Origin: Leidyana gryllorum EB-2025a
Lineage: Eukaryota; Protista; Apicomplexa
NCBI GenBank assembly: GCA_048772705.1
Contig: JBLWGC010000035.1
Location: 372,001 to 436,000 of the forward strand
DNA: 64,000 nt
Direction of reading: 5' to 3'
Part shown: piece after piece, positions 6,075 to 28,900 of the stretch
Layout: the number at the start of each line of letters is the position of its first letter
Numbering within the stretch: the stretch's first letter is position 1
Position numbers and translations under genes: made by a program
The notes under the pieces: model-generated
The model's input: the letters and a program-made list of their open reading frames with translations, nothing else
Told to the model about the DNA's origin: nothing
The model's database searches: none

Positions 6075-8120
6075 TTAAATGTGTGCTTTGCGTCCATGCC
6101 GTGCACACTCTGGAAAGGGAGTGTCTATAAATGTGTTGACCCCATTGGGGATCGGATTGTAATCAAATGTGTCACTGAACACCCAGAGCTGGAACTGATT
6201 GATTGACTCATCTGGGTAGGTATTGGGGACTTCAAGACTCAAAAAACTGTTCCGTCTTGGTCTGTACATCTCTCGTGGTAGATAGAGTCCAAACGCGTAT
6301 ACATCCTCTCCTCTCACATTTGCCATCAGTCCCAATCGCAGATCGCCCAGGGCACTATTGACAGAGATATTCACTCCAACCTCAATGATGGCGGAAGTCC
6401 AACTCCTCACACACAGCTGTACCTTCACTGCCTTCGCGTCAATGATCGAGAGATCAAGGGCCCTTTCAAAAGGCTCGGCCTCTATGATGGCGTGACGTTC
6501 GAGATATCTTTCCGTCACGAGCGAATCTGTAAGCTTATGGTATCTTCTAATCAATCGACCGTTTTTGAATGCGTCAAACCCATCACCTCCGTCGGCCAAG
6601 AAGTCATTGGTCATCACTTTGTACTTTCGACGTGGCTTTAGAAGCTCGCCCCCAATCCAAACATCCGCGATGATATTGTCAACATATGTGAATCGCATAT
6701 TGGCCACTCCAAGCATCAGACGCGGGGTTTGGAACTGTTGTGACAAGAGTGTACGCACTAACTCTCCTGACATCTCCATGAGAACCATGGTGTTCTTGAA
6801 GGGAAGCGCGCTTAGAACAACGTCAGCAGTCACTATGCCACTCGGAAGACACCCACGCACATTGCCCGGATTCACCACTGCAATGTCGGCCTCCGGTTCG
6901 GCCGCCCGCATCGCATCAGCTATCAGATGCACCAGTTGGGACTCCTCAGATCTCAAGATGTCACCCGATGCGTCGGCTGCCCGGCTGATTGATCGACAAG
7001 TACGCCCAACAATCCGCCGTCGTCCAGCCTCAGCGTCACTCGCAGCACGAGCGACAATGTCTCGCACTGAGGTGACAACAGGGTCGCCTGCAAAGGAATC
7101 TTGGTCTGGATTCCGACGGGAAGCCCGTATCAGTCGACCTGTCGCTTCGGCGGAGGGAACGAAGCCAGGACGAGAGAACTTGAGAGTTAAGTGCCCGACA
7201 TGGGATCCATAACATCCAGCTTGCATGGCTAATACTGGTTCGGTTCGGTGGTACGTTATGTGTGTGTGGCCGCTTAAAACGGCGGAATACCTTCCGTCCA
7301 AATTCTCAAGGAGGTCTTTCCATTCCTCTGAATCTTCACCAGCCGGATGTCCGCCTTGGTGAGCAAGGAGTACCAGCGCGTCACACCCGTGTTCGTTGAT
7401 GAGCGTGTCAGCCTCGCGATTCGCGGCTTCCACCATACTGCCGAAACGAAGCCACATCAGACCTCCGGTTCGGACCAGTAATGGAACAGATTGAGTGACG
7501 ACACCCACGAAGCCAACTTTTCGGCCGTTTGGCATAACCCAGATATAAGAGGGTGAATAGACAAGTGAGTCATCTTTTTCGTTGTAGATATTAGCCGCTA
7601 GGTGAGGTATGGAGGCATGGCCGTTGATCTTTTTATGCAGCCAGGTAACTCCGCGATCGAATTCATGGTTGCCCAGGGCCACTACACGTGTGTCCAGAGC
7701 ATTCAGGACGTCCAATACAGGCTGCTCATCGAGTGAAGCACATATGTACTCTGTAGCCCCCATATTGTCACCAGCAGACACAAGAATAGAGTTTTGAATG
7801 CCATATTGATGTCGCAGTTCTTGAATTGTTTGGGCAAGACTTATTGCTCCATACTCAGCTGTGCCAGCTTCGTCACGCCTCTGAGAGAGGCGGCCATGTA
7901 AGTCGTTGAAGAAGAAGATGTGGGCTTCGTCATTGTGAGCTAAGCGGCGTCGTACTGGATTGGTGATGACTTTGGGCTGGGGGAGGACGGGAAGACAAGT
8001 GTCAGCTGCAGAGTTGAAAAGTCCGCGGCCGAAGAGAACTTGGCGTGCAAGATCGTCTGGTCTAGCCTGAGTGGCAGTGGGGAGGGCAAGAAGTGAAGCG
8101 GCAACAGCAGATAGGAACAT
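6075..8120 (-). CDS. Secreted 5'-nucleotidase/UDP-sugar hydrolase family metallophosphoesterase (copy A), intronless
   Basis: Signal peptide from ATG 8120 (MFLSAVAASLLALPTA). Motifs FNDLHG, AGDNMG, GNHEFD, AHQG, GHTH; C-domain NPGNVRG, LPFKN, NDFLADGGDGF. No hydrophobic C-terminus. Confidence 0.92.
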   Translation of the reverse strand: MFLSAVAASLLALPTATQARPDDLARQVLFGRGLFNSAADTCLPVLPQPKVITNPVRRRLAHNDEAHIFFFNDLHGRLSQRRDEAGTAEYGAISLAQTIQELRHQYGIQNSILVSAGDNMGATEYICASLDEQPVLDVLNALDTRVVALGNHEFDRGVTWLHKKINGHASIPHLAANIYNEKDDSLVYSPSYIWVMPNGRKVGFVGVVTQSVPLLVRTGGLMWLRFGSMVEAANREADTLINEHGCDALVLLAHQGGHPAGEDSEEWKDLLENLDGRYSAVLSGHTHITYHRTEPVLAMQAGCYGSHVGHLTLKFSRPGFVPSAEATGRLIRASRRNPDQDSFAGDPVVTSVRDIVARAASDAEAGRRRIVGRTCRSISRAADASGDILRSEESQLVHLIADAMRAAEPEADIAVVNPGNVRGCLPSGIVTADVVLSALPFKNTMVLMEMSGELVRTLLSQQFQTPRLMLGVANMRFTYVDNIIADVWIGGELLKPRRKYKVMTNDFLADGGDGFDAFKNGRLIRRYHKLTDSLVTERYLERHAIIEAEPFERALDLSIIDAKAVKVQLCVRSWTSAIIEVGVNISVNSALGDLRLGLMANVRGEDVYAFGLYLPREMYRPRRNSFLSLEVPNTYPDESINQFQLWVFSDTFDYNPIPNGVNTFIDTPFPECARHGRKAHI

Positions 8121-8148
8121 GTAAAAAAGGCAAAAGAGTCGCGTCGCC

Positions 8149-10815
8149 TCAAAGCGCGAAGGTGGCAAAGACCAGCAGTAATACAGTACAACTCAGGAAG
8201 TGACGGAAGGGAACGGATCCAGAATGGGGTGCTACATCCAGATGCTTGATGAGTCCTTCTGGGAAGAAAGGGTTACCATCAAACACCTTGGACTGGAGTG
8301 TCATCTCGAGATATCTGGATTTGGTGGTGACAGTGAAAGTATGGCGTATACTGTGGGTGACGGGGCCGTCGAGGTCAGTCTTTTCGAGTGCATACTCGGT
8401 CAAATCCAGCAGGTTGTTGCTGTTGCTCATGTGTTTGACTGTGATGGTGAAAGGACCTGGAACGGTGACAGCTTTCACCACCTCGATGTTATATAGGACT
8501 GTGGCTACCCGACCTGGTGGTCCGACAACCACTTGGTGTGGCTGAGAGACGATGACAACTTGTCCATCTTGTAGCAAGGCGCTAACGTCAATAGCCCGCT
8601 CCAAGTTCGGTTTGGGTATGATCTCGTCGTTGAGAGCTGACAAAGACAGAGTGTGGTTTATCACTGCATCGTAGAGAGAAATCCCCATTGGCAGGGGCAG
8701 TCCTACTTCGAGGGATGTCAGAACGTCTGTAAGGCTATCGTAAGCGTCACCACCCTGAATGAGGAAGTCGGGAAGAACCATCAGAACCTTTTCACTTTCA
8801 GACGCTGCGCGACCTTTCGTTTCACTCCGCCCAGCCCCCTCTGATCGTCTTCCATTGGCTTCGCTAAAGGATGGTGAGTAGTACTCGAGAGTATTGCGTA
8901 GAATAGAAGCATTTGTGTTTTGCTTTCGGCCGGGGTCGTAGCGGTAGGTGAAGCCGGATACCTGAAATTGAGCACTTTTGCCTGCATAGCGGAAATGCAA
9001 GAATTGCTCTTCAAGAACGTCTAACAGATGCGCCGTCGTGGTGGGAAGTACTATCAGTTCGTCGAAGAAAGGTATGGAGTTCCACACGTCAATATTCGTC
9101 AATCGGTTGTGGCGATCATTTGTTGTCAACCAGTCCTCCCGAATCCCACCATCGTTCATCAAAGCCACCATGGGTATGCCCTGGTAAGCTTTGGTGCGGA
9201 GACTCTGTCTCCAATACTCGCCGGCGTGCAACATCGCATCAGCTATGTGGGCACCCAATACCGTCTCCTCGTCGCCAAGCGGTCGAGTCCAGGATTCCAG
9301 TAGTCTTCCGAGAGCCCTCCGAGGTAACTTTGTTTCCCGCTCACGCCACGCTGTGGCCACTATGTTCCCGACTGCGCGAGCGCGGGTTGGGATACTGAGT
9401 TCTGGAACGGCCAAGTTGTTCATGTACCATAACCCATTCTCAGGGTCATGCAAGTAGGGCGTGTAAGCGGGAATGACCTCACACTCGGTTGACAAGAGTT
9501 CCTGAGACATATGATCGAATTGTAGAGTACAAGATGCCAGATTGATACCGAAACCATCAGTTTGAATAACCGTATGACCAAATACTTTCCATACATACGA
9601 CTGATGGGTGTGGGCCGAGAGCACCAAATCAACTGACGGATCTAAAGCTTGGAGAAAACGGGCAAACTCGTGAGTTGGATTGTCTCGGATGAACTTCTGG
9701 GGGTCGTCCCCCCATCCACCTTGATGTATAATGACCACCACTGCATGACAAGTGTGCTCTCGTCGCAGTTGCAAGAGAACTTTGTCTGTAGTCTGAACAG
9801 GTGGCAGAACAGTAATAGTGTCCCTATTGTTGGGTCTGACAATGTCTGTAAATTCTTCGGTAACGGCAGCCGTGAAGCACACATTGTACAGCTTATCACC
9901 ACGAGCGACCGGAACGATGCGGAAACTTGGGAATATTGGATCTTGGGTGGATGAATTTACAATATTACTACACAAAGATTTAGTGTTGGGGTCCAATAGA
10001 TGGTCCAACCCATGCTGGAATTCGTGATTCCCTATCGCGTGTATATCAACACCCCACTTTGCCAATACTTGATAAGCAGGTATGTCAGAATCCAGACAGG
10101 ACTCGGCTTGAGAAGCTCCAATAGAGTCACCAGACGTAGCCAAGATCAAATCCGGCGAGTTCGATCGCAACCAATCCAATCTGATCGTCATACTGCCCGC
10201 GCCGCGTAGTCTTGAATCGTAGTTGGAGGGGACCATGTGGCCGTGCCAGTCATTGATTGATACTATTACGATCTCATCCAAATCAGTTCCAAAAGGTAGG
10301 AAAACAGTTGCCTCGCGAGAAACTTGCTGCTTACTACGGGTGTTTAGTAAGCTCAGAGAAATGTATGGGGGCTCCTGATGCTGATCGCGTACAGCAGCTT
10401 CGGCATCCCGTGCCTCCTCACTGTCATCGACTCTCAACAGGATCTTGAATGCTGTTTCGAGAGCAGCAAATGACCGATCTGCGTTATATTGGATCTCATC
10501 TACCCAGAAAAACGCTGGCAGGGACTTTTCATCAACCGCCACCTCGTATTGATCCTCATCCTCTACCTCCAAACCATCGCCATAATCATCAGCAGTCCCA
10601 CTCTCCTCCTCGTCTTCCTCCTGGTTATTTGTTGGAGATTCGTGACCATTGTTATTCAGTATTGACCCTTCCACCTCGAAAACTGTTCCAGGCGTAACAC
10701 TTTTTCGCAAGGGACGTACATATAGACGAAACCGGTCAACTGCATCCTGCTGTCTTGAACTACCGACCCCGACTTGTACGAGTAAAGCCGCTAGTAATCG
10801 TCGCATCATCATCAT
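8149..10815 (-). CDS. Surface (GPI-signal) 5'-nucleotidase family protein (copy B), intronless
   Basis: Signal peptide. Motifs INDWHG, SGDSIG, GNHEFQ, IHQG, SAHTHQ, NDGGIRED, PDFLIQGGDAY. Hydrophobic C-terminus ...FLSCTVLLLVFATFAL-stop. Confidence 0.9.
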   Translation of the reverse strand: MMMMRRLLAALLVQVGVGSSRQQDAVDRFRLYVRPLRKSVTPGTVFEVEGSILNNNGHESPTNNQEEDEEESGTADDYGDGLEVEDEDQYEVAVDEKSLPAFFWVDEIQYNADRSFAALETAFKILLRVDDSEEARDAEAAVRDQHQEPPYISLSLLNTRSKQQVSREATVFLPFGTDLDEIVIVSINDWHGHMVPSNYDSRLRGAGSMTIRLDWLRSNSPDLILATSGDSIGASQAESCLDSDIPAYQVLAKWGVDIHAIGNHEFQHGLDHLLDPNTKSLCSNIVNSSTQDPIFPSFRIVPVARGDKLYNVCFTAAVTEEFTDIVRPNNRDTITVLPPVQTTDKVLLQLRREHTCHAVVVIIHQGGWGDDPQKFIRDNPTHEFARFLQALDPSVDLVLSAHTHQSYVWKVFGHTVIQTDGFGINLASCTLQFDHMSQELLSTECEVIPAYTPYLHDPENGLWYMNNLAVPELSIPTRARAVGNIVATAWRERETKLPRRALGRLLESWTRPLGDEETVLGAHIADAMLHAGEYWRQSLRTKAYQGIPMVALMNDGGIREDWLTTNDRHNRLTNIDVWNSIPFFDELIVLPTTTAHLLDVLEEQFLHFRYAGKSAQFQVSGFTYRYDPGRKQNTNASILRNTLEYYSPSFSEANGRRSEGAGRSETKGRAASESEKVLMVLPDFLIQGGDAYDSLTDVLTSLEVGLPLPMGISLYDAVINHTLSLSALNDEIIPKPNLERAIDVSALLQDGQVVIVSQPHQVVVGPPGRVATVLYNIEVVKAVTVPGPFTITVKHMSNSNNLLDLTEYALEKTDLDGPVTHSIRHTFTVTTKSRYLEMTLQSKVFDGNPFFPEGLIKHLDVAPHSGSVPFRHFLSCTVLLLVFATFAL

Positions 10816-11118
10816 TGTTGCTTTGGGCCAATTTTACTGACTATCTCCATGACATAGAAGCAATAGCATATCACATAAAATTCCCTCTACCCTCCAAACC
10901 CCCATCCTCGACGCAAACCAGACTCTCTCATCTCACACAGTATCTCTTTCCTTTTTTTACTCTCAGTGCAGCTTCTTGCCCTCGAAAACAAGAGATGGTG
11001 AGAATGAATTGAGCCTCAGCCCTCTCCCATAGGTCTGTACGCAGATATCAATGGATGCAACACCATGATCTAAGACAAACTAAAACTAATGCACAGCAAG
11101 TAGTGGCCTTCATAAAGC

Positions 11119-14100
11119 TCACGCCATCACGAGCACTGCAGCAACAGCGAGTGCACTAAACGTCGCCAAGTTGCTCAGCGCTCCATCAGGCGCAACTCCA
11201 ACGTCTGTCGGTGAAACTGAAACGTCTGTTGTCGAATCTTCTGTTGCTTGGGTAGGTGAAGTAGTTGTTGTGGTGGTGGTTGAGCTAGTGGTGGTCGTCG
11301 GGGTGGTGGTAGTGGAAGTAGTGGGAGTCTCCTCCGTGGAAGTAGTGGGAGTCTCCTCCGTGGAAGTAGTGGGAGTCTCCTCCGTGGAAGTAGTGGGAGT
11401 CTCCTCCGTGGAAGTAGTGGTGGTGGTGGTAGGAGGTGTCATGGTGGTGGTAGATTCCTCCGTGGAGGTAGTAGTGGTAGTGGACTCCTCAGTGGTAGAC
11501 TCCTCTGTGGCTGGGGTAGATTCCTCCGTGGTCGACTCCTCAGTGGGCGGGGTAGACTCCGTAGTAGTGGTCGTGGACTCCTCAGTGGGCGGGGTAGAAT
11601 CCTCAGTGGTAGACGCCTCGGTGGCCGGGGTAGATTCCGTAGCCTCAGTGGTAGACTCCTCAGTGGGCGGGGTAGAATCCGTAGCCTCAGTGGTAGACGC
11701 CTCGGTGGCCGCGGTAGAATCCGTAGCCTCAGTGGTAGACGCCTCGGTGGCCGCGGTAGAATCCGTAGCCTCAGTGGTAGACGCCTCGGTGGCCGGGGTA
11801 GATTCCGTAGCCTCAGTGGTAGACTCCTCGGTGGCCGGGGTAGACTCCTCGGTGGTGGTGGTGGACCCTTCCGTGGTGGACTCCTCAGTGGCCGGGGTAG
11901 ACTCCGTAGTGGTGGTGGACTCCTCGGTGGCCGGGGTAGACTCCTCGGTGGTGGTGGTGGACCCTTCCGTGGTGGACTCTTCAGTGGGCGGGGTGGACCC
12001 TTCCGTGGTGGACTCTTCAGTGGGCGGGGTGGACTCCTCAGTGGTGGTGGTGGACTCCTCAGTGGCCGGGGTGGTCTCTTCAGTAGTGGTGGTAGTCTCT
12101 TCAGTTGTGGTGGTAGTCTCTTCACTTGTGGTGGTAGTCTCCTCCGTTGTGGTGGTAGGCTCCTCTGTAGTAGTGGGGGTCTCCTCCGTTGTGGTGGTTG
12201 TCTCATCTGTGGTGGTGGTGGTGTCCTCTGTAGTGGTGGTAGTCTCTTCAGTAGTGGTAGTAGGCTCCTCTGTAGTGGTGGTAGTGTCCTCTGTAGTGGT
12301 AGTAGTCTCTTCCGTTGTGGTGGTAGTCTCCTCTGTAGTAGTGGGGGTCTCCTCCGTTGTGGTGGTTGTCTCATCTGTAGTGGTGGGGGTCTCCTCCGTT
12401 GTGGTGGTTGTCTCATCTGTGGTGGTGGTGGTGTCCTCTGTAGTGGTGGGGGTGTCCTCTGTAGTGGTGGTTGTCTCATCTGTGGTGGTGGTGGTGTCCT
12501 CTGTAGTGGTGGGGGTCTCCTCCGTTGTGGTGGTTGTCTCATCTGTAGTGGTGGGGGTCTCCTCCGTTGTGGTTGTCTCATCTGTGGTGGTGGTGGTGTC
12601 CTCTGTAGTGGTGGGGGTCTCCTCCGTTGTGGTGGTTGTCTCATCTGTGGTGGTGGTGGTGTCCTCTGTAGTGGTGGGGGTCTCCTCCGTTGTGGTGGTT
12701 GTCTCATCTGTGGTGGTGGTGGTGGTGTCCTCTGTAGTGGTGGTAGGCTCCTCTGTAGTGGTGGTTGTCTCATCTGTGGTGGTGGTGGTGTCCTCTGTAG
12801 TGGTGGGGGTCTCCTCCGTTGTGGTGGTTGTCTCATCTGTAGTGGTGGGGGTCTCCTCCGTTGTGGTGGTTGTCTCATCTGTGGTGGTGGTGGTGTCCTC
12901 TGTAGTGGTGGGGGTGTCCTCTGTAGTGGTGGTTGTCTCATCTGTGGTGGTGGTGGTGTCCTCTGTAGTGGTGGGGGTCTCCTCCGTTGTGGTGGTTGTC
13001 TCATCTGTAGTGGTGGGGGTCTCCTCCGTTGTGGTGGTTGTCTCATCTGTAGTGGTGGGGGTGTCCTCTGTAGTGGTGGTTGTCTCATCTGTGGTGGTGG
13101 TGGTGTCCTCTGTAGTGGTGGGGGTCTCCTCCGTTGTGGTGGTTGTCTCATCTGTAGTGGTGGTTGTCTCATCTGTGGTGGTGGTGGTGTCCTCTGTAGT
13201 GGTGGGGGTCTCCTCCGTTGTGGTGGTTGTCTCATCTGTGGTGGTGGTGGTGTCCTCTGTAGTGGTGGGGGTCTCCTCCGTTGTGGTGGTTGTCTCATCT
13301 GTGGTGGTGGTGGTGGTGTCCTCTGTAGTGGTGGTAGGCTCCTCTGTAGTGGTGGTTGTCTCATCTGTGGTGGTGGTGGTGTCCTCTGTAGTGGTGGGGG
13401 TCTCCTCCGTTGTGGTGGTTGTCTCATCTGTAGTGGTGGGGGTCTCCTCCGTTGTGGTGGTTGTCTCATCTGTGGTGGTGGTGGTGTCCTCTGTAGTGGT
13501 GGGGGTCTCCTCCGTTGTGGTGGTTGTCTCATCTGTGGTGGTGTCCTCTGTAGTGGTGGGGGTCTCCTCCGTTGTGGTGGTTGTCTCATCTGTGGTGGTG
13601 GTGGTGGTGTCCTCTGTAGTGGTGGTAGGCTCCTCTGTAGTGGTGGTTGTCTCATCTGTGGTGGTGGTGGTGTCCTCTGTAGTGGTGGGGGTCTCCTCCG
13701 TTGTGGTGGTTGTCTCATCTGTAGTGGTGGGGGTCTCCTCCGTTGTGGTGGTTGTCTCATCTGTGGTGGTGGTGGTGTCCTCTGTAGTGGTGGGGGTCTC
13801 CTCCGTTGTGGTGGTTGTCTCATCTGTGGTGGTGGTGGTGTCCTCTGTAGTGGTGGTGGTCTCCTCCGTTGTGGTGGTGGTAGTCACCTCCAAGTCTAGT
13901 TCTACCATTTTACCCTCATCGTTGCCAAGTTGATTCTTGTAGTAAATCCTACTACGCAACGTTACTTCGAGATGATCGGCGCTGTGGGTAATCGGGCGTC
14001 TGAACTCAAAAAGAGCACCGTCGGAATTGATCTGGTCGACCTCCCACTCCTCAGACCACTCGGTGGAGCGAGCATCTTCGTCTTGTTCGCCGGATGTACT

Positions 14101-17100
14101 GGCCACGACGTCCACTTGGAAGGGGCCACGGAGTGTCTCCGCAGCATCGACCGAAGCCTTCAGGGTAAGTTCGAGCTGGTCGTCAGCATCGACAGCAAAT
14201 TGCGGAGCTTGAATGAACTCCCAAGAAATCTTCGATCTCAGATCGCTCACAGTGTCATATGAGCGAGAGTATGAGCGCGGTTTGACTGTTCCCTCGGTCT
14301 GTTGTTTATGGGTGAGGTATTCTTCCATATTGATGGCATCAAAGATGCCGAGGTCCCGAACGTCTTTGCCCAACAAAAAGCCATCGAAATTGTGACCACC
14401 TCCGGCCAGGAAGTTGTTGGTCACGATTCTGTACTCTGAGTCGGGTAGGATCGGAAGACCAGTCTCCTCTATAATGAGGCTGTCTTCGAGTATTTCATTG
14501 TGCTCAGCAGATCCATGATCCGCGAATTTCCAAGTGAATCCAGACACTTGCATGATGTAATCGTTTCGAGATTCGTGCCACTGGTTCTCGAGAATCTTGA
14601 CCAGGTCAGCTCCAGTGACGGTCATGAGCACCAGTGAGTTGGAATAGGGCAAAGCTTCCCAAACGTTGTGTCGAGTGATCACTCCAGTCTCAGCGGTATT
14701 CCAGTCCGCCATCACAGATTGGCAATGAGTGAAGGCGAATTGCACGTTGGAGTCGGACTTCTGAGCAGCCCAGAGGAATGAGTCAGCAACCAGTGCTCCA
14801 AGAGGACTTTCGGTATACTGCGGCTGAGGCCAGTCGACAGAGGTTTCTGCCAAAACTTGGGCTCCAACAACGGCAGCGTCCGCGAAAGCTTGCATAACGA
14901 CATTCTTGACCTTCTCGGTACGATCAGACACTCCTGATGCAACGAGTCCGGTCGCCGAATCTATCCACTGCTCCTTCTCCTCATCCCAGTGAACGGTGTG
15001 CGTTGTGGGTTGGAAGCTGCCAGACACTGACAACAGCTGGTGAGACGAGCCGTCAAAGACGAGCTCGTAGACACTCAAAGCACGGCCATGGCTCCAACCT
15101 TGACCAACTACAGCAGTAGTGGTTCCGTCAACAGGGTTCCAAGAGTAAGACTGGTGTGTGTGAGCACTGGAAACGATTTGCACTCTGGGGTCCAAGTCTT
15201 TCAAGAAGTGCGCAAATTCAGCAGTTGGATGGGCCTCAACATATTCATCAGCCGTCTCCGCCGATGTCTCAGCGCCCTGATGTATGAGGGCCAAGACGAC
15301 GTCGGCACCTTCCTCCAAGACGGTATCCACCAACTCGTTGACCCCATCAACAGCTGAACCCACATCGATCTTGCTGGTAGCCAGCGCGTTGGTCGTCTGT
15401 TTCAGACTCTCGAGAGTGACTCCAATGACGCCAATCTTGTAGGTCTCACCCTCGACTTCCACGTCGATGATGGTGTGACCCGGCATCGCCTTCTCGTTGG
15501 TACCTTTGACCATCACGTTGGCTCCCAAGGGAGTACCGACGAAATCTGTGATGGACAAAAAGTAATCCAGGCCAGTCTCGTGGCCGTAGGCGTGGTCAAT
15601 GTCGTGATTGCCCAGAACTGTGGCTTTGGTCCCCCACTGTTTGGCAATCTCCAAGATCGGCTGGTCGTTGTTCAGAGCGGATTCCACTTGGGTGGCGCCG
15701 ATGGTGTCGCCGCCACTCAAAACGATTTGGGCATCCACATTGCGAGCCGCCAAGTCATCCAATGTTAAACTAGTTGCAATGGCGCCGTAGTACCCTTCTC
15801 CGGCGGTATTCTTCGTCTGGCGGATGGCTCCGTGGATATCATTGTAAACAACAACTTGGACAGTTTTGTTGGCGCGGAATTTCAGTGAATGCGTGTGGCT
15901 GACTCCAGCTGGCATCGGATTTCTATCGAATACCTCCGAGAAGAGTGCGAACTCAAAATTCACCTCAACTCCGTCCTCAAACGGTACAGGGATTGACGGT
16001 CTCAAGGGGGTTGTAGAGGTGAGCTCTCCATCGATCTCAATCCAACGAGTTTCATCCGGTTGCCTGCTGTCTGTGTATACCAGCCGGAAAGGACCTTGAG
16101 CGACGAGATCTTCTTCAGGTAACTCGTATACCAGAGCGAGGAGACCCAAGGATTGGTCATATGTAACAGAGGTGAGTTCAACATGTGCGGAGACATCGGC
16201 GGTGATATCCACTGCCCGTTCGAATGGGACCTCCACAAGCTTCCCATCATTCTCAGCTGCCATTGCTTCATTGTATTCAATGGTATATTGGTTGTCAGCG
16301 TCTGCTCTGTGCTGACGGTCAGTACCCTTAGCGAAATCCACAAAGTTGTCCCCTCCAGGAGAAAGGAAGTTGTTGGTGACGACACGGTACGTAGCCTCCA
16401 ACGTCATGGGAACATACTCGTTCGTGTGTCTGTCGATCACTTGCATGGAGTCCGCCAGAATACGATGGCCCAGTTCTTGAGTAGGATCATATTTGTAGGT
16501 CATACCGCTGATCTGAAGATGGTACATCCCACGCTCGCTTCCTGAAGCAGCGATCCACTGATGCTCAAGTACGCCCTTGATGTCGGTACCGGTCATAGTC
16601 ATCACCTCCAACTCATTGCTGAAAGGAAGGGTGTCGAAGACGCTACGAACAGTCACGTCTCCCTCTTGCCAGTCCTTTCGAATTCCACCGTCATTGGTGA
16701 AAGCGATCTCTACAGTTTCATCGGACTGGCGAGCTTTGTGCAACATCGCGTCAACAATGTGGCAGCCCAACTCGGTCTCGGAGCCGCCGGGCGCACGCCA
16801 AGTCTTAGCGATCTTACCAGTGATCCGCGAACCAGTTTCGTCAGCAGAGACGATCGCTCGCTTAATTTCCTCATTCACTTGCAGAAGCAACTCTGGTAGC
16901 TCAGCTTCTGCGTCAGGTGACAGAGGTTCGCCGTTTTCCTCCCATCTCTCAGTGTCGTAATTGTAATAGATTGATTGGCGGACAGAAGTGTACGAGACAG
17001 AAGGTGGTGCTACGAGTTGTCGTGTGTTGCGCGAGAGCTCAAAGTCAAAAGTGGCCAGGTTTACTCCATAGGAACCCGCCTGGATAACCGGTGGTAGATT

Positions 17101-18396
17101 GGGATTGTTGGTACTGCTGGCCCAGTTGTAGTTTTGATGAGTGTGGGCCGTGGCCAACACATCAATGTATCGGTCTTCAGTGTTGAGATTCTGCAAAAAT
17201 TGGGTAAATTCTGATCCAACATTGTTGTCCATCTGGGAATCAACATCCTTGTTGGACGCCGAACCGCCTTGGTGGTACAAACAAATAACGATATCACATT
17301 CTTCTTCTTCTTTGAGGATCTTAGCGTACTTGTTGGCTTCCGGGGCAGCTTCCAAAAACTTGAGCGCTGCCACGTTGTCATATACCACGACGGAGGGCAG
17401 AGACTCCAAAGTAACCCCTACAAACCCGATCTTATATCTCTCGCCTTCGCGGTCAATCTCGACGATATGTGTGGCATCCAGAAAGACGTCTCCGGGTTGT
17501 TTGCCTTCCGGAGCGTTCTCTCCCCACACGATATTGGCCCCCAGCTGAGGGAATTTGAACTTGGTTTCGGCATCTTGCATGATGCTTTCATATCCGCGAT
17601 CAAATTCGTGATTGCCAAGGGCCTGGCACTCAGTTCTCCACATATGAGCTATAGTCTTGGTGGGGTCATCATCGTTGGCGGCAGACTCGAACAGAGTGCC
17701 GCCAATCGTGTCTCCCACGCTGACCACAATCAAATCTTCTCCAGCATTCTCTTTTCTCATTTGTTCAAGCTTCATTGTCATACTTAGGGCTCCCGAGTAT
17801 GCACCAGCGTTGTTTGGGCCTTGTTGTACAATGTATCCATGGAAATCATTGTAGGCGGCAACACGGATGATGTCCACCTTCGCCTCTACGGGGACTACCG
17901 ATTGAGTGCTGTACACCGGTTCGTCTTTGTAGTGGACTGTCAAGGTAAAAGGGTAAGCTCCGGCAGCTGTTGTCTTGGGGATGCTGAGTAACACCTTGAA
18001 TCTTTGGCTCTCTTCCTTAGTAAGCGCCGCAAGTCTTGTGGCATACCCAGGCTCCCCAACTTCAATCGACTCAACAGATATGCCTATACCAGTCAAACCT
18101 TCTACCTTCACCGTGTATTCACCGCGATGCTCGCGATCAACTTGCTGTATGATACCAGAGATTTCGTACAATTCACCAGGATGAGCGACACGATAAGTGC
18201 CACTCTTGTTTTGTGTGTCTAGAACAACGTATGGATCGATCGTTTCGTTCGCGATCGTAGGGACGGTCTCTCGACGGTGGGACTCCACCAGAGAGTCGCG
18301 AAATGCTTTCTGCGCGGCCGTGAGAGGTACCTCGGGCAACCTTCCGGTGGCCACGGCCAGGCATACTCCGAACAATCCTAGTAGTTTCAGATACAT
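11119..18396 (-). CDS. 2425-aa surface protein: signal peptide, two tandem 5'-nucleotidase modules, Thr/Glu-rich mucin stalk and GPI signal (copy C), intronless
   Basis: Module 1: YNDFHG, GDTIG, GNHEFD, AHTHQ, NDGGIR. Module 2: YNDIHG, GDTIG, GNHDID, AHTHQ. About 900 aa of T/E repeats follow. C-terminus GALSNLATFSALAVAAVLVMA. Confidence 0.93.
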   Translation of the reverse strand: MYLKLLGLFGVCLAVATGRLPEVPLTAAQKAFRDSLVESHRRETVPTIANETIDPYVVLDTQNKSGTYRVAHPGELYEISGIIQQVDREHRGEYTVKVEGLTGIGISVESIEVGEPGYATRLAALTKEESQRFKVLLSIPKTTAAGAYPFTLTVHYKDEPVYSTQSVVPVEAKVDIIRVAAYNDFHGYIVQQGPNNAGAYSGALSMTMKLEQMRKENAGEDLIVVSVGDTIGGTLFESAANDDDPTKTIAHMWRTECQALGNHEFDRGYESIMQDAETKFKFPQLGANIVWGENAPEGKQPGDVFLDATHIVEIDREGERYKIGFVGVTLESLPSVVVYDNVAALKFLEAAPEANKYAKILKEEEECDIVICLYHQGGSASNKDVDSQMDNNVGSEFTQFLQNLNTEDRYIDVLATAHTHQNYNWASSTNNPNLPPVIQAGSYGVNLATFDFELSRNTRQLVAPPSVSYTSVRQSIYYNYDTERWEENGEPLSPDAEAELPELLLQVNEEIKRAIVSADETGSRITGKIAKTWRAPGGSETELGCHIVDAMLHKARQSDETVEIAFTNDGGIRKDWQEGDVTVRSVFDTLPFSNELEVMTMTGTDIKGVLEHQWIAASGSERGMYHLQISGMTYKYDPTQELGHRILADSMQVIDRHTNEYVPMTLEATYRVVTNNFLSPGGDNFVDFAKGTDRQHRADADNQYTIEYNEAMAAENDGKLVEVPFERAVDITADVSAHVELTSVTYDQSLGLLALVYELPEEDLVAQGPFRLVYTDSRQPDETRWIEIDGELTSTTPLRPSIPVPFEDGVEVNFEFALFSEVFDRNPMPAGVSHTHSLKFRANKTVQVVVYNDIHGAIRQTKNTAGEGYYGAIATSLTLDDLAARNVDAQIVLSGGDTIGATQVESALNNDQPILEIAKQWGTKATVLGNHDIDHAYGHETGLDYFLSITDFVGTPLGANVMVKGTNEKAMPGHTIIDVEVEGETYKIGVIGVTLESLKQTTNALATSKIDVGSAVDGVNELVDTVLEEGADVVLALIHQGAETSAETADEYVEAHPTAEFAHFLKDLDPRVQIVSSAHTHQSYSWNPVDGTTTAVVGQGWSHGRALSVYELVFDGSSHQLLSVSGSFQPTTHTVHWDEEKEQWIDSATGLVASGVSDRTEKVKNVVMQAFADAAVVGAQVLAETSVDWPQPQYTESPLGALVADSFLWAAQKSDSNVQFAFTHCQSVMADWNTAETGVITRHNVWEALPYSNSLVLMTVTGADLVKILENQWHESRNDYIMQVSGFTWKFADHGSAEHNEILEDSLIIEETGLPILPDSEYRIVTNNFLAGGGHNFDGFLLGKDVRDLGIFDAINMEEYLTHKQQTEGTVKPRSYSRSYDTVSDLRSKISWEFIQAPQFAVDADDQLELTLKASVDAAETLRGPFQVDVVASTSGEQDEDARSTEWSEEWEVDQINSDGALFEFRRPITHSADHLEVTLRSRIYYKNQLGNDEGKMVELDLEVTTTTTTEETTTTTEDTTTTTDETTTTTEETPTTTEDTTTTTDETTTTTEETPTTTDETTTTTEETPTTTEDTTTTTDETTTTTEEPTTTTEDTTTTTTDETTTTTEETPTTTEDTTTDETTTTTEETPTTTEDTTTTTDETTTTTEETPTTTDETTTTTEETPTTTEDTTTTTDETTTTTEEPTTTTEDTTTTTTDETTTTTEETPTTTEDTTTTTDETTTTTEETPTTTEDTTTTTDETTTTTDETTTTTEETPTTTEDTTTTTDETTTTTEDTPTTTDETTTTTEETPTTTDETTTTTEETPTTTEDTTTTTDETTTTTEDTPTTTEDTTTTTDETTTTTEETPTTTDETTTTTEETPTTTEDTTTTTDETTTTTEEPTTTTEDTTTTTTDETTTTTEETPTTTEDTTTTTDETTTTTEETPTTTEDTTTTTDETTTTEETPTTTDETTTTTEETPTTTEDTTTTTDETTTTTEDTPTTTEDTTTTTDETTTTTEETPTTTDETTTTTEETPTTTEETTTTTEETTTTTEDTTTTTEEPTTTTEETTTTTEDTTTTTDETTTTTEETPTTTEEPTTTTEETTTTSEETTTTTEETTTTTEETTPATEESTTTTEESTPPTEESTTEGSTPPTEESTTEGSTTTTEESTPATEESTTTTESTPATEESTTEGSTTTTEESTPATEESTTEATESTPATEASTTEATDSTAATEASTTEATDSTAATEASTTEATDSTPPTEESTTEATESTPATEASTTEDSTPPTEESTTTTTESTPPTEESTTEESTPATEESTTEESTTTTTSTEESTTTMTPPTTTTTTSTEETPTTSTEETPTTSTEETPTTSTEETPTTSTTTTPTTTTSSTTTTTTTSPTQATEDSTTDVSVSPTDVGVAPDGALSNLATFSALAVAAVLVMA
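11230..13886 (-). repeat. Coding minisatellite of ~21-nt units encoding Thr-rich heptads (TTEETPT / TTEDTTT / TTDETTT), then TEESTP(A/P) units and 24-nt TTSTEETP units
   Basis: Directly visible tandem repeats, e.g. gtggtggttgtctcatct and gtagtggtgggggtctcctcc recurring dozens of times on the + strand. Confidence 0.97.
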
Positions 18397-18696
18397 CAGT
18401 GATACGAATCACTTGCAAAAAAAACTTGGACGGGACTTTGAAGCTTCGTGTCCCAGAAACCTCCTGAGGTCCCATTCAGCGCACAGCCATCAAACTTCCG
18501 AAAATCTTCGTCTGACACACGCTATTGTTGCACATCCCGACTTCTGCATAACTAATTTGCTTTTCTCTCATTTTCAACTTTTCAAGATTCTTTCTACACC
18601 AATGCATCCGTTGAGTGCAGTTTTGCATGATGTTGCGGTGATTCAGCGCTGAAGTGAAAATGCATTGTCGGACGTCTGAGCGTCGACTCACAGATC

Positions 18697-21417
18697 TCAT
18701 TCCACGTGTATGGATGGCTGAAAGATGTTTGAGCGGCTTCTGTGCAGTGGAGTCATTGTTTGGCAGGTTTCGGGGTTCACAAGTGGCTCGTCAAGAAGAG
18801 CAAAGAGCCAAGTGGATGTATAAGCTAAAATGAGGAGGACGACAGGACTCGTACTCAGCAGACCACTCATCCCGTTGTCTAGCGGCATATATCTCGCCTG
18901 CAGGCCGCGCGGCAAAGGTGTGTTCAAGGCATCTTGATTGTGGGCTTCAACACTCAAGTATTGCAAACCGCGTTCTCTGATCTCTTTTGTTGACATCAAC
19001 AACGTTATCTGATGGGAACCAATGTGGGCTTCGACGGAACCAACATAGACACGCGCTCGTTAATGAGGCTCTTGAGAGGGGTGAGGCTCAAGCTGAGCCT
19101 CGAGTTCCCACTTCGCCGCGTTGTTGGTGCAGGCGGCCTTCGTGGTATCTATATGTCGCAGATGCGTCAACTGGACCGAGCTATATATCGGTGGCATCAC
19201 AAGATAGAGATCAGTCTGTCCAGTCAAGACCTTCGAGCAATGAAAGTTGATGGTGATGCTGATCTCGGTCATCGTCCCAGATTGAGGTGGTCCCGTGACC
19301 TCCAGTTGGCAACTATCAGTCTTATTGTTCCCGGCTAAGAGCGCTCTGTAATCTGGAGGCAGTGAGAGTGATGTTTCTTGAACACCCTTGTTCCAGGCGA
19401 ATAACCGAAACGCGTCAGCGACTTGATACGTCGTCTCATTACACCGCGTGCTTGGGATTCTCGAGATGGCCGAGATTGCATCTCCTCCGGGCCGAACAAA
19501 GTCAGGGATAGCAATTAAGTACTCGCCGTCTGATACCAACGGTTGTAGGTTGCCTGATTGGTCGAAGACCTCCATGGACACAATCTGGAACGTGTCCTCA
19601 GCGGAATTCGGGGAGAACTCGTAAACAAGCCCACGGCTTGATGTCAGAGTACGCCACTTTCGTCCCCGTCCGCGTATCCGAGAAAAGTTTTGCTGCTCCT
19701 GAAAGAGATCCAGCGACTCAAAACCCTTCAGTCGACAAACCCACAGTGTATCCGAAAACGGCACAATGCGACTCATCTTTTGCCGGTCCAGAGCGTGCGC
19801 TGAATCCAGAAGGAAGCCCCCCGCACCATCCTGGAATTCAATACAGCTGCCGTCAGACTGGGTTCTTCATCCAGCATAACCGTCTCCACTGCATCTGCCA
19901 CCAATCGTGCGAGACCATTGTCTTCCATCTCAGACACATCAGGGGCAGGCATGCGGCATCGAATATCGCCGTGGTGAGGGTTCGAATTTGCTTCCTCGAC
20001 TTCCGCCTCCCAGAGTTGCAGCATCTCAAAGATTCTCTGTGCGTCAGCCTGCCCGTCCACCCACTGTTGATCGTAGCAAGATTCCCAAAGACAATGATCA
20101 ACTACTTCTACATTGTGACCGACAACGTCATAAGCAGTCATTCGGCCGTGATTGAACTTAAACCGGTGCAATGCGAACTCTTGTAGTCTTCCTCGTGTCT
20201 GTACAACTGACCGAGTCCACCCGACCGGCACATTTGAGTGCGCAAGGTCATCAGCGGTCTGTGTGATGTACAGCCCCTGCTTTGAGCTTCCGCCGACAAT
20301 CAAGTCCACATTCGTGTCCAGTTTGGAGATCAGTGTCAGGAATTCGCTGTCGGGGGCCGAAGAATCGCTGAGACTGTCATGTACCAGCGCTATCACAGCT
20401 GAGCATCCCAACTCTTCCTTCACACCTTCGGCCCAAATATTTCCCGGGATGTGAGGCTCTTCAATACTCCAGTGCTCCCGGGCGAAGAGTGGAACACTGT
20501 TCAGCGCGGAAGACGGCAGAAGCCCTATGAATCCAACCTTATACTCGACACCATCGTTCCCAATCAGGGACTTGATCTTGTACGGCTCAAATATCCATCC
20601 AGGTATTTCAAAGTCCCTTGGGCGTAATGGACGGGAGTTTGTCCGGTCCCATGCATTTGTGATTATGAGAGACGTCTGTGATGCAAGCCGAAACCGATAT
20701 CGCCAGAAATTGGAAACCTCGAAATTGCCCAGACTTGAGGTCCAAATTCGACAAGAGTCCATTAAGATGTCTTCGAAGCTATCAAGCCCGACTTGATTCG
20801 AGTAGCCAGGCTCACCAACATTATATCGAGTAGACACGAACTCTAAGAGCGGGAATAGTGACTCCCGGAAATGGGACATGGCGTACCCAAAGTGGATCAT
20901 GGAAGCCTTGTTGCTGTCCGTCGAGTCCCGAGACACGTAATTACCTTTGATGCTGCTGATGCTGCCCACTACATATTCGGTCTCGGGAGTATCCAGTGGC
21001 ACCTTGTCTCTCAAACATAACTTCCCCCATTGTATTGCAAAAGCTCCGTTATCAGACGTTACATTCTCGTCAACGGAACTTTCAACAACGAACCATATGT
21101 CAAGTTCTGGATTAACTTCACGGAACGGCGATCGAAGTCTGCGAAGTTCAAAATCTTCCGGCAAGGTCATCCAAACAGGTTCAGTGCCATTGTTATACGC
21201 TTTGAGGAATTGTTCCACCTTGTATCCCGCTCCTTCCTGATGGTGAACGTGTAAAGCCTCCAGTGAAGCGTTGCCAGATGCTTCCACTTCTAAGAAACCA
21301 AAGCTTGTCTCCTGGACCTACCACTTCGGGGTGGTGGTACATATATCCCTGTTGGCCGTGAGCAGTACTCCATAGAAGGAAAGATATGAGTGCAGTCCAA
21401 CTTTTACCCCTCCTCAT
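18697..21417 (-). pseudogene. Disrupted, catalytically degenerate fourth 5'-nucleotidase paralogue (copy D)
   Basis: Signal peptide MRRGKSWTALISFLLWSTAHG. Homologous blocks YKVGFIG, AVIALVH, VDLIVGG, VVQTRG, LARLVADA, IVPFSD, PDFVRPGGD. Frame changes near 21295 and near 19820, and an in-frame TAA at 19060-19062. Metal-ligand motifs are lost. Confidence 0.75.
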
Positions 21418-25916: not shown

Positions 25917-28900
25917 TCACGCAGCACTGCTCTGCTCGACTGACGGGGAAGCGGTCTGTTGCAGGTGCTTATAAGTCACTCTACGCCACAGCTGCACCAA
26001 TCCTGCGACATCAGCAGATGCCAATATCGTAGCAGGATGGTTTACATCCACCGCCAGTACTCCGTGCTCGTGCCCGCGCAGATCCTGAGCGGCGACGTAG
26101 TCTGCATCGCCCATTGCTGGTCTACTGAACACCTTGATCTACAATGGGAGATGGAACGGTCGTTCAGTTACTTGTCACCTCACCTTGCTATCTTCCGAAC
26201 CGGACACCAACCAAAGTTGATCCTCTCTTGGTACGATTCGCGACATGAGGGGTACACAAGTGTGTTGAATCTGGTGGGTGGTGGTGGTGGTGGTAAATTG
26301 AATGTGAGGGTGGCTGTACGCACCTTTAGTCTTTGCTTGACGCTGAGTTGGCGGATGGCAACGCTCGACAGACTGTATTGACACTTAACGATAGCAATCG
26401 TTTGATCGCAATAGTTCACAATCACAGTGGGTTGGCTTCCTGGGCAGAAAGTGACGCAAGTGACGGCAGCTTGATTCTGAAAGGCAAAGAGAGTGATTGG
26501 TGAGGAAGTCAAAGACGAACTTACGGCGCCTGTCAAGTGAAGTTTTGTTACGAATTGGAGCCGGTTGTTTTCAGCCACCTCATACGCTTCGACTGAGCCG
26601 TCTTTAGTTCCGGCAATCAGATTCAGACCTGATGTGTCGAAACAGATGGCTCGAATCTCGGCGTCGACTCTGATGCGTTGCACCACATTCCCCTCGTGTG
26701 AGTCGACAACTCGCACAACTTGCTTTTGGTTTGATGTGAGGAATAATCTAGGATCTGTGGGGAGATATGCTGCCACCAAGATGGGAACAGAGTCAGAGAA
26801 AATCTTGGACAGATAGCCTTGTTGCAAATCCCAGAATCGTACAGTGGAATCGATAGAAGTGGATGCGAGATGCATTCCATCGTGAGTAAAGAACAAAGAG
26901 GTCACAGCTTTAGAATGCCCCTCGAACACTTTCCACTTTTCGACGGGTTCTGTCGGCGGACGCCACCATTCCGAGGTCTCTTTGTCATTCGGTGAGATTG
27001 AAGGTCTGCGTTGGTCGCCATTATTGGCCAACTCTTTGGTGAGGAGTTCCCTGTCTTCAGGAGTTAACCGGATTTTGTAGGTCAAGATGACCCCGGCCTT
27101 TGTGGCGACGGCCAGTAAGTGGAATTCTCGATCTATCGTGGGCTTGGCAAACTTGATACAGGTAACGGCAGTCTTCACGGGCAATGTCATTGTCTGCCAT
27201 CTCGTGATCTCTCCATGTAATTTCGCTTTCTCTTTGTCGCGACTCTCATTCAGCAAAGTCTCATTTCCTTGGAGACTCTCAGCCAGCAGTTCGGCGACAG
27301 GTGGCGTAGAAGTCCGTCCACTTCGTCCACCCCGCCCCAAAGTGCGCTTTGCTCCAACTCCCCATATGTTGGAGAGCCCTTGCATTAACATCTCGTTTAA
27401 GGTTCCAGCTTGGGTCTTCTGCTGTGGGGACTGAAGAAAAGCAAGTCATACCAAAGGACCGCGACGAGACAGGTGCATAACCATAACAGAAACACGAGGG
27501 ACGCTCTTCATCTATCACACAGCACCGAGGACACAAGTGAGGCAGGGGGACGGCGGCTGGGGTGCAGGACGCACAAATAAATGCCGGAGACGGCTGACAC
27601 TCCACACCACTTCCACCACTCCATGGGCTGTAATAACCAAATCTCGCCTCCGCGCCTCCACAAGCCGCTGCCGAAACCCAACGAGAGCCCGAACAATGAT
27701 CGGTAATAGGATACTCGCTTGGAGAGACGGCAGCAGATCGTTGTCGCAGACATCTATGAAAGATAGCAGAGCGGCAGATGCAGTGTCCATAGCTAGAAAT
27801 CGTCTTCATACTCCGACTCGACGGACAATCGTAGTGCCACTGCCGCTCAGTGGAGGGGGAAGACCAACATTGACAATAAGGAGGAGAAAGCGGCGGTGGA
27901 ATCATAACATTGTACGGCGAGGGAGTCACAGGCATTCCAATAACGATATTTCCCGACTGTAGAGGGGTGTGAAATCTCTCCTCAGGCGGCGGCGGCGGTG
28001 TGCGAACCTCTTCTTGAGCAGAGGCTCGGTGAGCCTCATACGAGTAAAAAGGAGAAGGAGGGACAAATGAAGGGGGGGAAGCGCTATCAAAGGGGGCGCT
28101 TGCACAATCGGGACTCGCCGCCGAGGGCAATTCTCCATAAGGGGACACCACAAAATCCTGTTCTGTTACAAATACCTTTTGCTTTTGATTGGCAATCGCT
28201 GAGGGATTTCCTCGTAACGAACACACCTCTTGATAGGTCAGATCTCGAGCGGCTCGAACATCACTCGCCCACACGGCAGGCACACTCTCAAAGTCTTCAG
28301 GCGTTAAGAGCGTCAGTCCAGCTCTGGCCACTTTGCGTAGTGCCACAGGATTGTAAGCCAGACGTAGCCACTCCGATGGCCCTTCTGCACTCGGAGTACT
28401 TCTGGCAGAGGTGGGCGTTTGTTGGTCCAGTAAAACAATTAAGCGTCGGCAGTCTGGCGAAACCTGCGAGACGGAGACGGGAGAAGAAAGTTGTAATGTG
28501 AAGCCGAATCTATAAGGCACTTACCTTTGACCATAGGGGATTCTTGATCGCCCAGTCATCTAACTGATTCAGCTGGGAGCAGCAAAGACACAGTCCCACA
28601 AATCTGGAAGGGGTGGCAAATGACCGATCGATGAGAGGGTGGCAGCTCACCGGAAGTGGTTCGTGACCCGTTTTTGGTCAGGTAAGGGTAGATCGTCCAA
28701 TTCAGAGGAATTGAGGACAGAGACGCTCAGAGGAATTTCCTGTCCTGGCAATTGGAATGAGATTTCACGTTGTTTTAACCATCCTTGTTCATTGGTCGCT
28801 CGGCTGGTGAGTGGTTCGAAAGGACCTTCATGCTTGGTAAGTCGACGAACTATAGAATTGAGAATATGGTCAGCTTCACCAACCAATAGAATGTCGCCTC

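What the first reader, a model, noticed from the sequence alone, without database searches (positions are those of the whole stretch)
6075..21417. Intronless tandem array of bacterial-type ecto-5'-nucleotidases: a layered surface nucleotide-processing system
Seen: four co-oriented paralogues (five modules) over 15 kb with no introns, in a region where most genes carry many 30-50 nt introns. Targeting differs: A has a signal peptide only, B is GPI-type with no stalk, C is GPI-type on a ~900-aa mucin stalk, and D is degenerate. Established: this calcineurin-like metallophosphoesterase plus 5'-nucleotidase C-domain family dephosphorylates extracellular nucleotides, and apicomplexans are purine auxotrophs. 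Inference: signatures such as GDTIGAT, QAGSYG, LEHQW and YRVVTNNFLxxGGDNF look more like bacterial secreted 5'-nucleotidases than animal CD73. That suggests a lateral transfer followed by local expansion into soluble, membrane-proximal and glycocalyx-tip enzymes, for purine/phosphate scavenging or for converting host ATP/ADP danger signals to adenosine.
Basis: partly seen in the sequence, partly recalled or inferred. Interest (0 to 1): 0.9.

Follow-up and report, generated by a model that had tools for sequence, protein, structure and literature searches.

The report
Bacteria-derived surface nucleotidases of gregarines
A gut parasite of the gregarine group carries a family of secreted and surface-anchored nucleotide-cutting enzymes that its ancestors apparently took from actinobacteria and rebuilt, one of them as a two-headed enzyme on a 900-residue stalk; they most likely free nucleosides that the parasite cannot make itself.

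Summary
The array is real. A (secreted), B (GPI-like tail) and C (two modules, 888-aa Thr/Glu stalk, GPI-like tail) are unbroken frames; D is broken three times and lacks the metal ligands. The genome is a gregarine's: best hits are Protomagalhaensia, Gregarina and Blabericola proteins. Thirteen gregarine modules form one clade (98/98) that groups with Actinomycetota enzymes (100/100); grouping with the sampled eukaryotic CD73-type proteins is rejected (AU p=9e-5). Relatives on eukaryotic contigs exclude contamination. Corrections: the transfer and the secreted/GPI split are old and shared across gregarines, not a local expansion (array members only 23-28% identical); five more copies lie elsewhere, three catalytically dead; lacking introns is common here. 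A and C1 keep the catalytic set; B lacks the dyad Asp; C2 has a remodelled substrate pocket. Best mechanism: ecto-5'-nucleotidases feeding nucleoside salvage (five ENT matches, two adenosine kinases, no SAICAR synthase found). Activity, location and expression in this organism are untested, and no Toxoplasma, Cryptosporidium or chromerid nucleotidase could be put in the tree. The scan had already noted this array and the outlying copies in this genome. I found no paper on it.

The parts
6075..8120 (-). Gene A: signal peptide, metallophosphoesterase + 5'-nucleotidase C domain, FN3/Ig-like domain, no membrane anchor; all metal, catalytic and substrate-pocket motifs present
8149..10815 (-). Gene B: signal peptide, N-terminal accessory region with acidic insert, catalytic module (metal ligands intact, dyad Asp replaced by Gln), FN3/Ig-like domain, GPI-like tail; its stop lies 28 nt before A's ATG
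11119..18396 (-). Gene C (2425 aa): signal peptide, Ig-like N domain, two catalytic modules each followed by an FN3/Ig-like domain, Thr/Glu stalk, GPI-like tail
15871..17889 (-). C module 1 plus its beta-sandwich: catalytic set intact, lacks the first substrate Arg position; 50% identical to the C104 copy
13897..15870 (-). C module 2 plus its beta-sandwich: metal site intact, but the conserved substrate Arg (E. coli R410 column) and Asp (D504 column) are replaced
11227..13890 (-). 888-aa Thr/Glu-rich mucin-like stalk built of 21-nt and related tandem repeats; exact length depends on the assembly
11119..11226 (-). GPI-signal-like C terminus of C (small residues, spacer, terminal hydrophobic stretch)
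   Evidence: hydropathy only
18697..21417 (-). Gene D: broken, metal-ligand-less paralogue; frame changes near 21300 and near 19810, in-frame stop at 19060-19062; a hydrophobic stretch follows in the last piece

Best explanation
An ancestor of the insect-gut gregarines (before Gregarina, Protomagalhaensia and Blabericola split) acquired a secreted 5'-nucleotidase gene from an Actinomycetota-type bacterium. It gained a gregarine-specific C-terminal FN3/Ig-like domain and, in many copies, a GPI signal, and it duplicated early. In this species the intact copies (secreted A, GPI-type B and C104, stalked two-headed C) act outside the cell as two-metal 5'-nucleotidases. They strip phosphate from nucleotides in the gut lumen or at the host contact, the nucleosides enter through ENT transporters and adenosine kinase re-phosphorylates them. 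Shown: architecture, residues, tree position, partner genes. Inferred: GPI anchoring, glycosylation and extension of the stalk, activity, substrates and the salvage role. C2 probably has a different substrate or mainly binds; D and three outlying copies are not enzymes.
For: Fold and family. Gregarine clade 98/98 within an Actinomycetota + gregarine clade 100/100, itself inside three further bacterial nodes (99/98, 100/99, 100/99) (the 93-row tree agrees). AU rejects gregarines + sampled eukaryotic CD73-type, p=9e-5. The 80 best loci returned from 185,579 prokaryotic genomes are all Actinomycetota by record title; named best hits of the G. niphandrodes protein are actinobacterial, except one labelled Paenibacillus. 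Host-like GC3 of 0.50-0.57 vs 0.77-0.97 in six actinobacterial relatives. Relatives come from trophozoite transcriptomes (PMC8051059). Genome has 5 ENT matches, two adenosine kinase-like genes, 2 GDA1/CD39 matches and no SAICAR synthase match.
Against: No activity, localisation or expression data for this organism (no runs listed). Toxoplasma, Cryptosporidium, Porospora and chromerid nucleotidases are not in the tree; the profile search shows only the top 150, and two true gregarine members scored close to that cut-off. Eukaryotic outgroups are only a moth and a green alga. A and B are long branches. Salvage needs one enzyme; it does not explain the stalk, the remodelled C2 or the dead copies.
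Confidence: 0.62

Rival explanations
1. Same origin, but C and the dead copies serve mainly as surface-coat or adhesion proteins (mucin stalk plus Ig/FN3 domains), with nucleotide binding or residual activity secondary.
For: Three unbroken GPI-type copies have lost the metal ligands yet keep 698-893 codon frames; C2 has lost two substrate residues; FN3/Ig-like domains; 888-aa stalk.
Against: A, C1 and C104 keep the catalytic set despite 23-50% identity, as do the relatives in five other gregarine samples.
Confidence: 0.17
2. The enzymes mainly supply phosphate or split other substrates (UDP-sugars, NAD, 2',3'-cyclic or 3'-nucleotides from digested RNA), as UshA-like enzymes do.
For: NCBIfam matches span UshA, NadN and CpdB models, all below cut-off; substrate pockets differ between modules; the title of a reference in PMC10454023 describes Corynebacterium ushA as phosphate-starvation inducible.
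Against: The best NCBIfam match of C is a surface-anchored 5'-nucleotidase model; the clade lies far from the outgroup modules; purine auxotrophy gives a direct need for nucleosides.
Confidence: 0.11
3. The enzymes modulate host purinergic signalling by removing ATP/ADP or making adenosine, like streptococcal and staphylococcal surface nucleotidases.
For: Analogy with AdsA, S5nA, NudP and Nt5e (PMC10454023); a long stalk could reach host receptors.
Against: Nothing tested here supports it; in Drosophila extracellular adenosine is needed for an effective immune response (PMC4411001), so producing it need not help an insect parasite.
Confidence: 0.07
4. The family is an old eukaryotic (alveolate) lineage inherited vertically, or the island is a contaminant.
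For: Alveolate homologues could not be sampled; a very divergent copy (C109) cannot be placed reliably (branch 4.6).
Against: AU test; nesting among bacteria; G. niphandrodes homologue on a 552 kb contig among eukaryotic genes; another homologue beside an actin-related gene; host-like composition.
Confidence: 0.03

Closest known systems
Actinomycetota secreted bifunctional metallophosphatase/5'-nucleotidases (Arthrobacter, Sanguibacter, Micromonospora, Kineococcus, Corynebacterium proteins)
   Same: Same clade (100/100), 31-36% identity to gregarine modules, same motifs, N-terminal signal peptide.
   Different: Bacterial C-terminal Ig-like and wall-anchor parts are not detectably related to the gregarine C-terminal domain (hhalign E 0.46); gregarine copies carry GPI-like tails, a mucin stalk and dead variants.
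Gregarina niphandrodes 5'-nucleotidase domain protein XP_011134357.1 and EukProt relatives from Protomagalhaensia, Gregarina sp. Poly and Blabericola migrator
   Same: Same clade, same C-terminal beta-sandwich, intronless where genomic DNA is known, secreted and GPI-type forms.
   Different: All are single-module proteins; no two-headed or stalked form and no tandem array was seen (the G. niphandrodes gene has no paralogue within 10 kb). Annotated only, no study found.
Streptococcal and staphylococcal wall-anchored 5'-nucleotidases (S5nA, NudP, Nt5e, Ssads, AdsA)
   Same: Same two-domain enzyme displayed on a pathogen surface; NF047875 is C's best NCBIfam match (E 1.5e-67).
   Different: Score 229 against a cut-off of 1050; LPXTG anchor instead of GPI; immune role shown only in mammalian hosts.
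CD73 / NT5E and E. coli UshA
   Same: Fold (Foldseek E about 1e-40 to 1e-36), metal ligands and His-Asp dyad; CD73 is also GPI-anchored (own knowledge).
   Different: 20-23% identity, separate clades; GPI anchoring is convergent; extra Ig/FN3 domains and stalk are absent from both.

Membership tests
UshA/CD73-type 5'-nucleotidase family | Calcineurin-like metallophosphoesterase domain followed by 5_nucleotid_C | tested here: met
   Pfam over cut-off for A, B, C; model of A matches UshA/CD73 structures
UshA/CD73-type 5'-nucleotidase family | Dimetal ligands (DxH, GD, GNH, H, HxH/Q) | tested here: met
   Present in A, B, C1, C2; absent in D, C169 and both C36 copies
UshA/CD73-type 5'-nucleotidase family | Catalytic His-Asp dyad | tested here: inconclusive
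   Intact in A, C1, C2 and C104; Asp is Gln in B; absent in D
UshA/CD73-type 5'-nucleotidase family | Substrate pocket: Arg residues, two stacking aromatics, ribose-binding Asp | tested here: inconclusive
   Complete in A; first Arg position missing in B, C1, C2; C2 also lacks the second Arg and the Asp
UshA/CD73-type 5'-nucleotidase family | Hydrolysis of 5'-nucleotides | not testable with these tools
   needs an assay
NCBIfam UshA, NadN, Nt5e or streptococcal LPXTG 5'-nucleotidase | Score over the curated cut-off | tested here: not met
   All matches far below cut-off
Eukaryotic CD73-type clade | Grouping with animal and algal CD73-like proteins | tested here: not met
   AU p = 9e-5; only Plodia and Cymbomonas sampled
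Actinomycetota-type secreted 5'-nucleotidases | Grouping with them in a tree | tested here: met
   100/100; nested versus sister position unresolved (actinobacteria form one side in 12% of bootstrap trees)
GPI-anchored proteins | Signal peptide plus terminal hydrophobic tail without cytosolic part | tested here: met
   B, C, C104, C169 by hydropathy; no dedicated predictor available
GPI-anchored proteins | Anchor attached, released by PI-PLC | not testable with these tools
   needs experiment
Mucin-like stalk | Long Thr/Ser/Pro-rich repeat; O-glycosylated | tested here: inconclusive
   Composition and repeats met; glycosylation not testable

The most novel reading that the evidence does not exclude
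One actinobacterial enzyme gene became the scaffold of a gregarine surface-protein family with divided roles: secreted and membrane-bound active nucleotidases, a two-headed enzyme with unlike pockets held far from the membrane on a mucin stalk, and several maintained catalytically dead copies that act as adhesins or ligand-binding coat proteins at the gut interface.
Probability: 0.3. Interest if true: 0.75.

Novelty: new variant of a known kind. Interest (0 to 1): 0.55.

Why it matters
Gregarines feed outside host cells and cannot be assumed to reach host cytosolic purines; how they obtain them is undescribed. This gives a concrete, testable first step (surface dephosphorylation before ENT uptake and adenosine kinase) and a well-supported case of a bacterial gene rebuilt with eukaryotic targeting, converging on the GPI-anchored design of CD73. 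G. niphandrodes in mealworms and cockroach gregarines have relatives, so tests are feasible. The enzyme class and bacterial transfers into apicomplexan nucleotide salvage (Cryptosporidium, own knowledge) are known, which limits the surprise.

Tried and rejected
Introns as the cause of D's breaks: a frame-restoring GT..AG pair exists by chance-level motifs at breaks 1 and 2, but the one with a common donor at break 2 would remove residues that align with homologues, and none spans the stop. A B-to-A splice that skips B's tail: only non-typical donors, no support. Homology of the C-terminal domain to bacterial Ig-like parts: none. New fold for that domain: rejected, generic FN3/Ig sandwich, Z up to 9.3. 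Synteny with G. niphandrodes: two of its neighbours map about 50 kb from the C104 copy, none to the window; weak. C109 as a vertically inherited CD73-type control: too divergent to place. Literature: no paper holds gregarine + nucleotidase in a relevant sense; the Corynebacterium ushA paper could not be read.
Full report
Observation. The window is C35:372001-436000 of a 15.5 Mb assembly in 237 contigs. On the minus strand lie A (6075-8120, 681 aa), B (8149-10815, 888 aa), C (11119-18396, 2425 aa) and the broken D (about 18697-21417). Pfam gives Metallophos plus 5_nucleotid_C over cut-off in A, B and twice in C, and 5_nucleotid_C in a piece of D; D's N-terminal piece matches the family profile at E 2e-12. 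Gaps are 28 nt (B to A), 303 nt (C to B) and 300 nt (D to C). GC content of the catalytic parts is that of the flanks. The array has no excess of intron motifs, but long open frames are common in the flanks too, and 64% of G. niphandrodes genes have no intron (PMC9250747). Lack of introns therefore says little about origin.

Anatomy. Hydropathy shows an N-terminal signal-like stretch in A, B and C and a terminal hydrophobic tail in B and C, not A. C's stalk is 888 aa, 60% Thr and 20% Glu, made mostly of an 88-copy 21-nt repeat. Every module is followed by a domain of about 110 aa that folds confidently (pLDDT 89) as a seven-stranded sandwich and matches FN3/Ig-like domains at Z 8-9.3, with no standout. 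It is shared by all gregarine members and was not found in the bacterial relatives. B, C and most relatives also have an N-terminal region that looks Ig-like on weak evidence only; A lacks it. The model of A matches UshA, Thermus and CD73 structures. Against E. coli UshA columns: A has every metal, catalytic and pocket residue; C1 has the catalytic set and most of the pocket; B has Gln for the dyad Asp; C2 keeps the metal site but has lost the second pocket Arg and the Asp; D has lost the metal ligands. D changes frame near 21300 and near 19810 (in a run of six G) and has an in-frame stop at 19060-19062 that no in-frame intron spans. Other copies in the assembly have unbroken frames, so D is most simply a pseudogene of an already non-catalytic copy; assembly error cannot be excluded without reads (none listed).

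Organism and relatives. The best hits of C1 are proteins of Protomagalhaensia sp. Gyna (44%) and P. wolfi (42%), then bacteria and Gregarina sp. Poly at 25-29%. A profile search of 1.84 billion representatives added Blabericola migrator, G. niphandrodes XP_011134357.1, a further EukProt entry and two proteins from one public run. The G. niphandrodes gene is intronless on a 552 kb contig among DnaJ, adaptin and kinesin genes; another relative shares a contig with an actin-related gene. The EukProt sets come from gut trophozoites (PMC8051059), so relatives are transcribed at that stage. Forms with and without a hydrophobic tail both occur, and one sample holds both. The species of this window was not identified beyond being a gregarine whose C1 and C104 modules are closest to Protomagalhaensia proteins.

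Origin. In a 53-row tree (LG+C20+F+G4) the 13 gregarine modules are one clade (98/98) inside a clade otherwise made of Actinomycetota-type proteins (100/100), which sits within three more bacterial nodes; moth and green-algal CD73-type modules fall elsewhere (a 93-row quick tree agrees). Forcing gregarines with those eukaryotes costs 197 log units, p-AU 9e-5. All 80 kept loci from the prokaryotic genome scan are Actinomycetota by title, though that scan is pattern-limited. Whether gregarines are nested in or sister to the actinobacterial group is unresolved. GC3 is host-like (0.50-0.57 against 0.77-0.97), as expected of an old transfer. Left out of the trees: the dead copies (too divergent). 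Gap: no other alveolate nucleotidase could be fetched, and only the top 150 profile hits are visible.

Age of the array. Its modules are 23-28% identical to each other; C1 is 50% identical to a copy on C104 and 39-42% to Protomagalhaensia. B and C2 branch before the C1/C104/Protomagalhaensia group; A lies in the other half of the clade with moderate support. The duplications are therefore mostly older than this species. Elsewhere the genome has an intact GPI-type copy (C104), three unbroken GPI-type copies without metal ligands (C169, two on C36) and a very divergent copy with ligands (C109). Notes of earlier readers led me to look for the C36 and C109 copies.

Mechanism. By family knowledge these enzymes use two metals and a His-Asp pair to release phosphate from nucleotides held by the C domain. 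The genome has five ENT matches, two adenosine-kinase-like genes, two GDA1/CD39 matches and several phosphoribosyltransferase matches, and no SAICAR synthase match. That fits a chain of extracellular dephosphorylation, nucleoside import and re-phosphorylation, a coupling proposed for other protozoan parasites (PMC6356682). The two kinases lie about 5 kb from the C104 copy, two genes apart; this was noticed after the fact and may be chance. The stalk would hold C's heads away from the membrane (inference). The signal-quenching idea borrows from streptococcal enzymes (PMC10454023) and has no support here; in Drosophila adenosine favours the immune response (PMC4411001).

Verdict. A real, previously unreported (by ten literature searches) gregarine subfamily of a known enzyme family, very probably of actinobacterial origin (about 0.85), with new architectures. 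Function is inferred, not shown. New variant of a known kind; interest 0.55.

Noticed in passing
G000:C104:787400-789750 (L104 1378-2529 and 2596-3699): Two tandem intronless adenosine-kinase-like genes (E 6e-60 and 4e-45 to solved adenosine kinases), followed by HSP90, one other ORF and the GPI-type nucleotidase copy about 5 kb away.
   Followed up: partly
G000:C36:238800-241000 (L131 496-2670) and C36:54600-56700 (L130 46-2142): Two unbroken GPI-type paralogues with no Pfam match that have lost the metal ligands; found only with the family profile.
   Followed up: partly
G000:C109:153156-155432 (L135 3657-5933): Very divergent nucleotidase-like gene with metal ligands kept, starting 7 nt after a secreted lipase-like gene; position in the tree unreliable.
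   Followed up: partly
window 7935-7950 (gene A) and L135 1706-3649: A has a basic Arg-Arg-Arg-Leu-Ala motif just before its catalytic domain, and the C109 lipase-like protein has the same motif after its N-terminal part; it recalls the RRL cleavage motif of Toxoplasma secreted proteins (from memory). Not conserved in other species' secreted copies.
   Followed up: no
window 8120-8149: B's stop codon lies only 28 nt before A's start, so A's promoter or B's 3' end must overlap the neighbouring coding sequence, or the two share a transcript.
   Followed up: partly
L008 7765-9960 (G000:C104): Cysteine-rich repeat protein (731 aa) resembling oocyst wall proteins by eye, directly upstream of the C104 nucleotidase copy.
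   Followed up: no
window 28647-33500: Myosin heavy chain gene with IQ-like repeats, coiled coil and a long unusual tail, read by eye from the ORF list.
   Followed up: no
G000:C104:844000-848000: Orthologues of two neighbours of the G. niphandrodes nucleotidase gene (thioredoxin-domain and pseudouridine synthase genes) lie here, about 50 kb from the C104 copy.
   Followed up: yes
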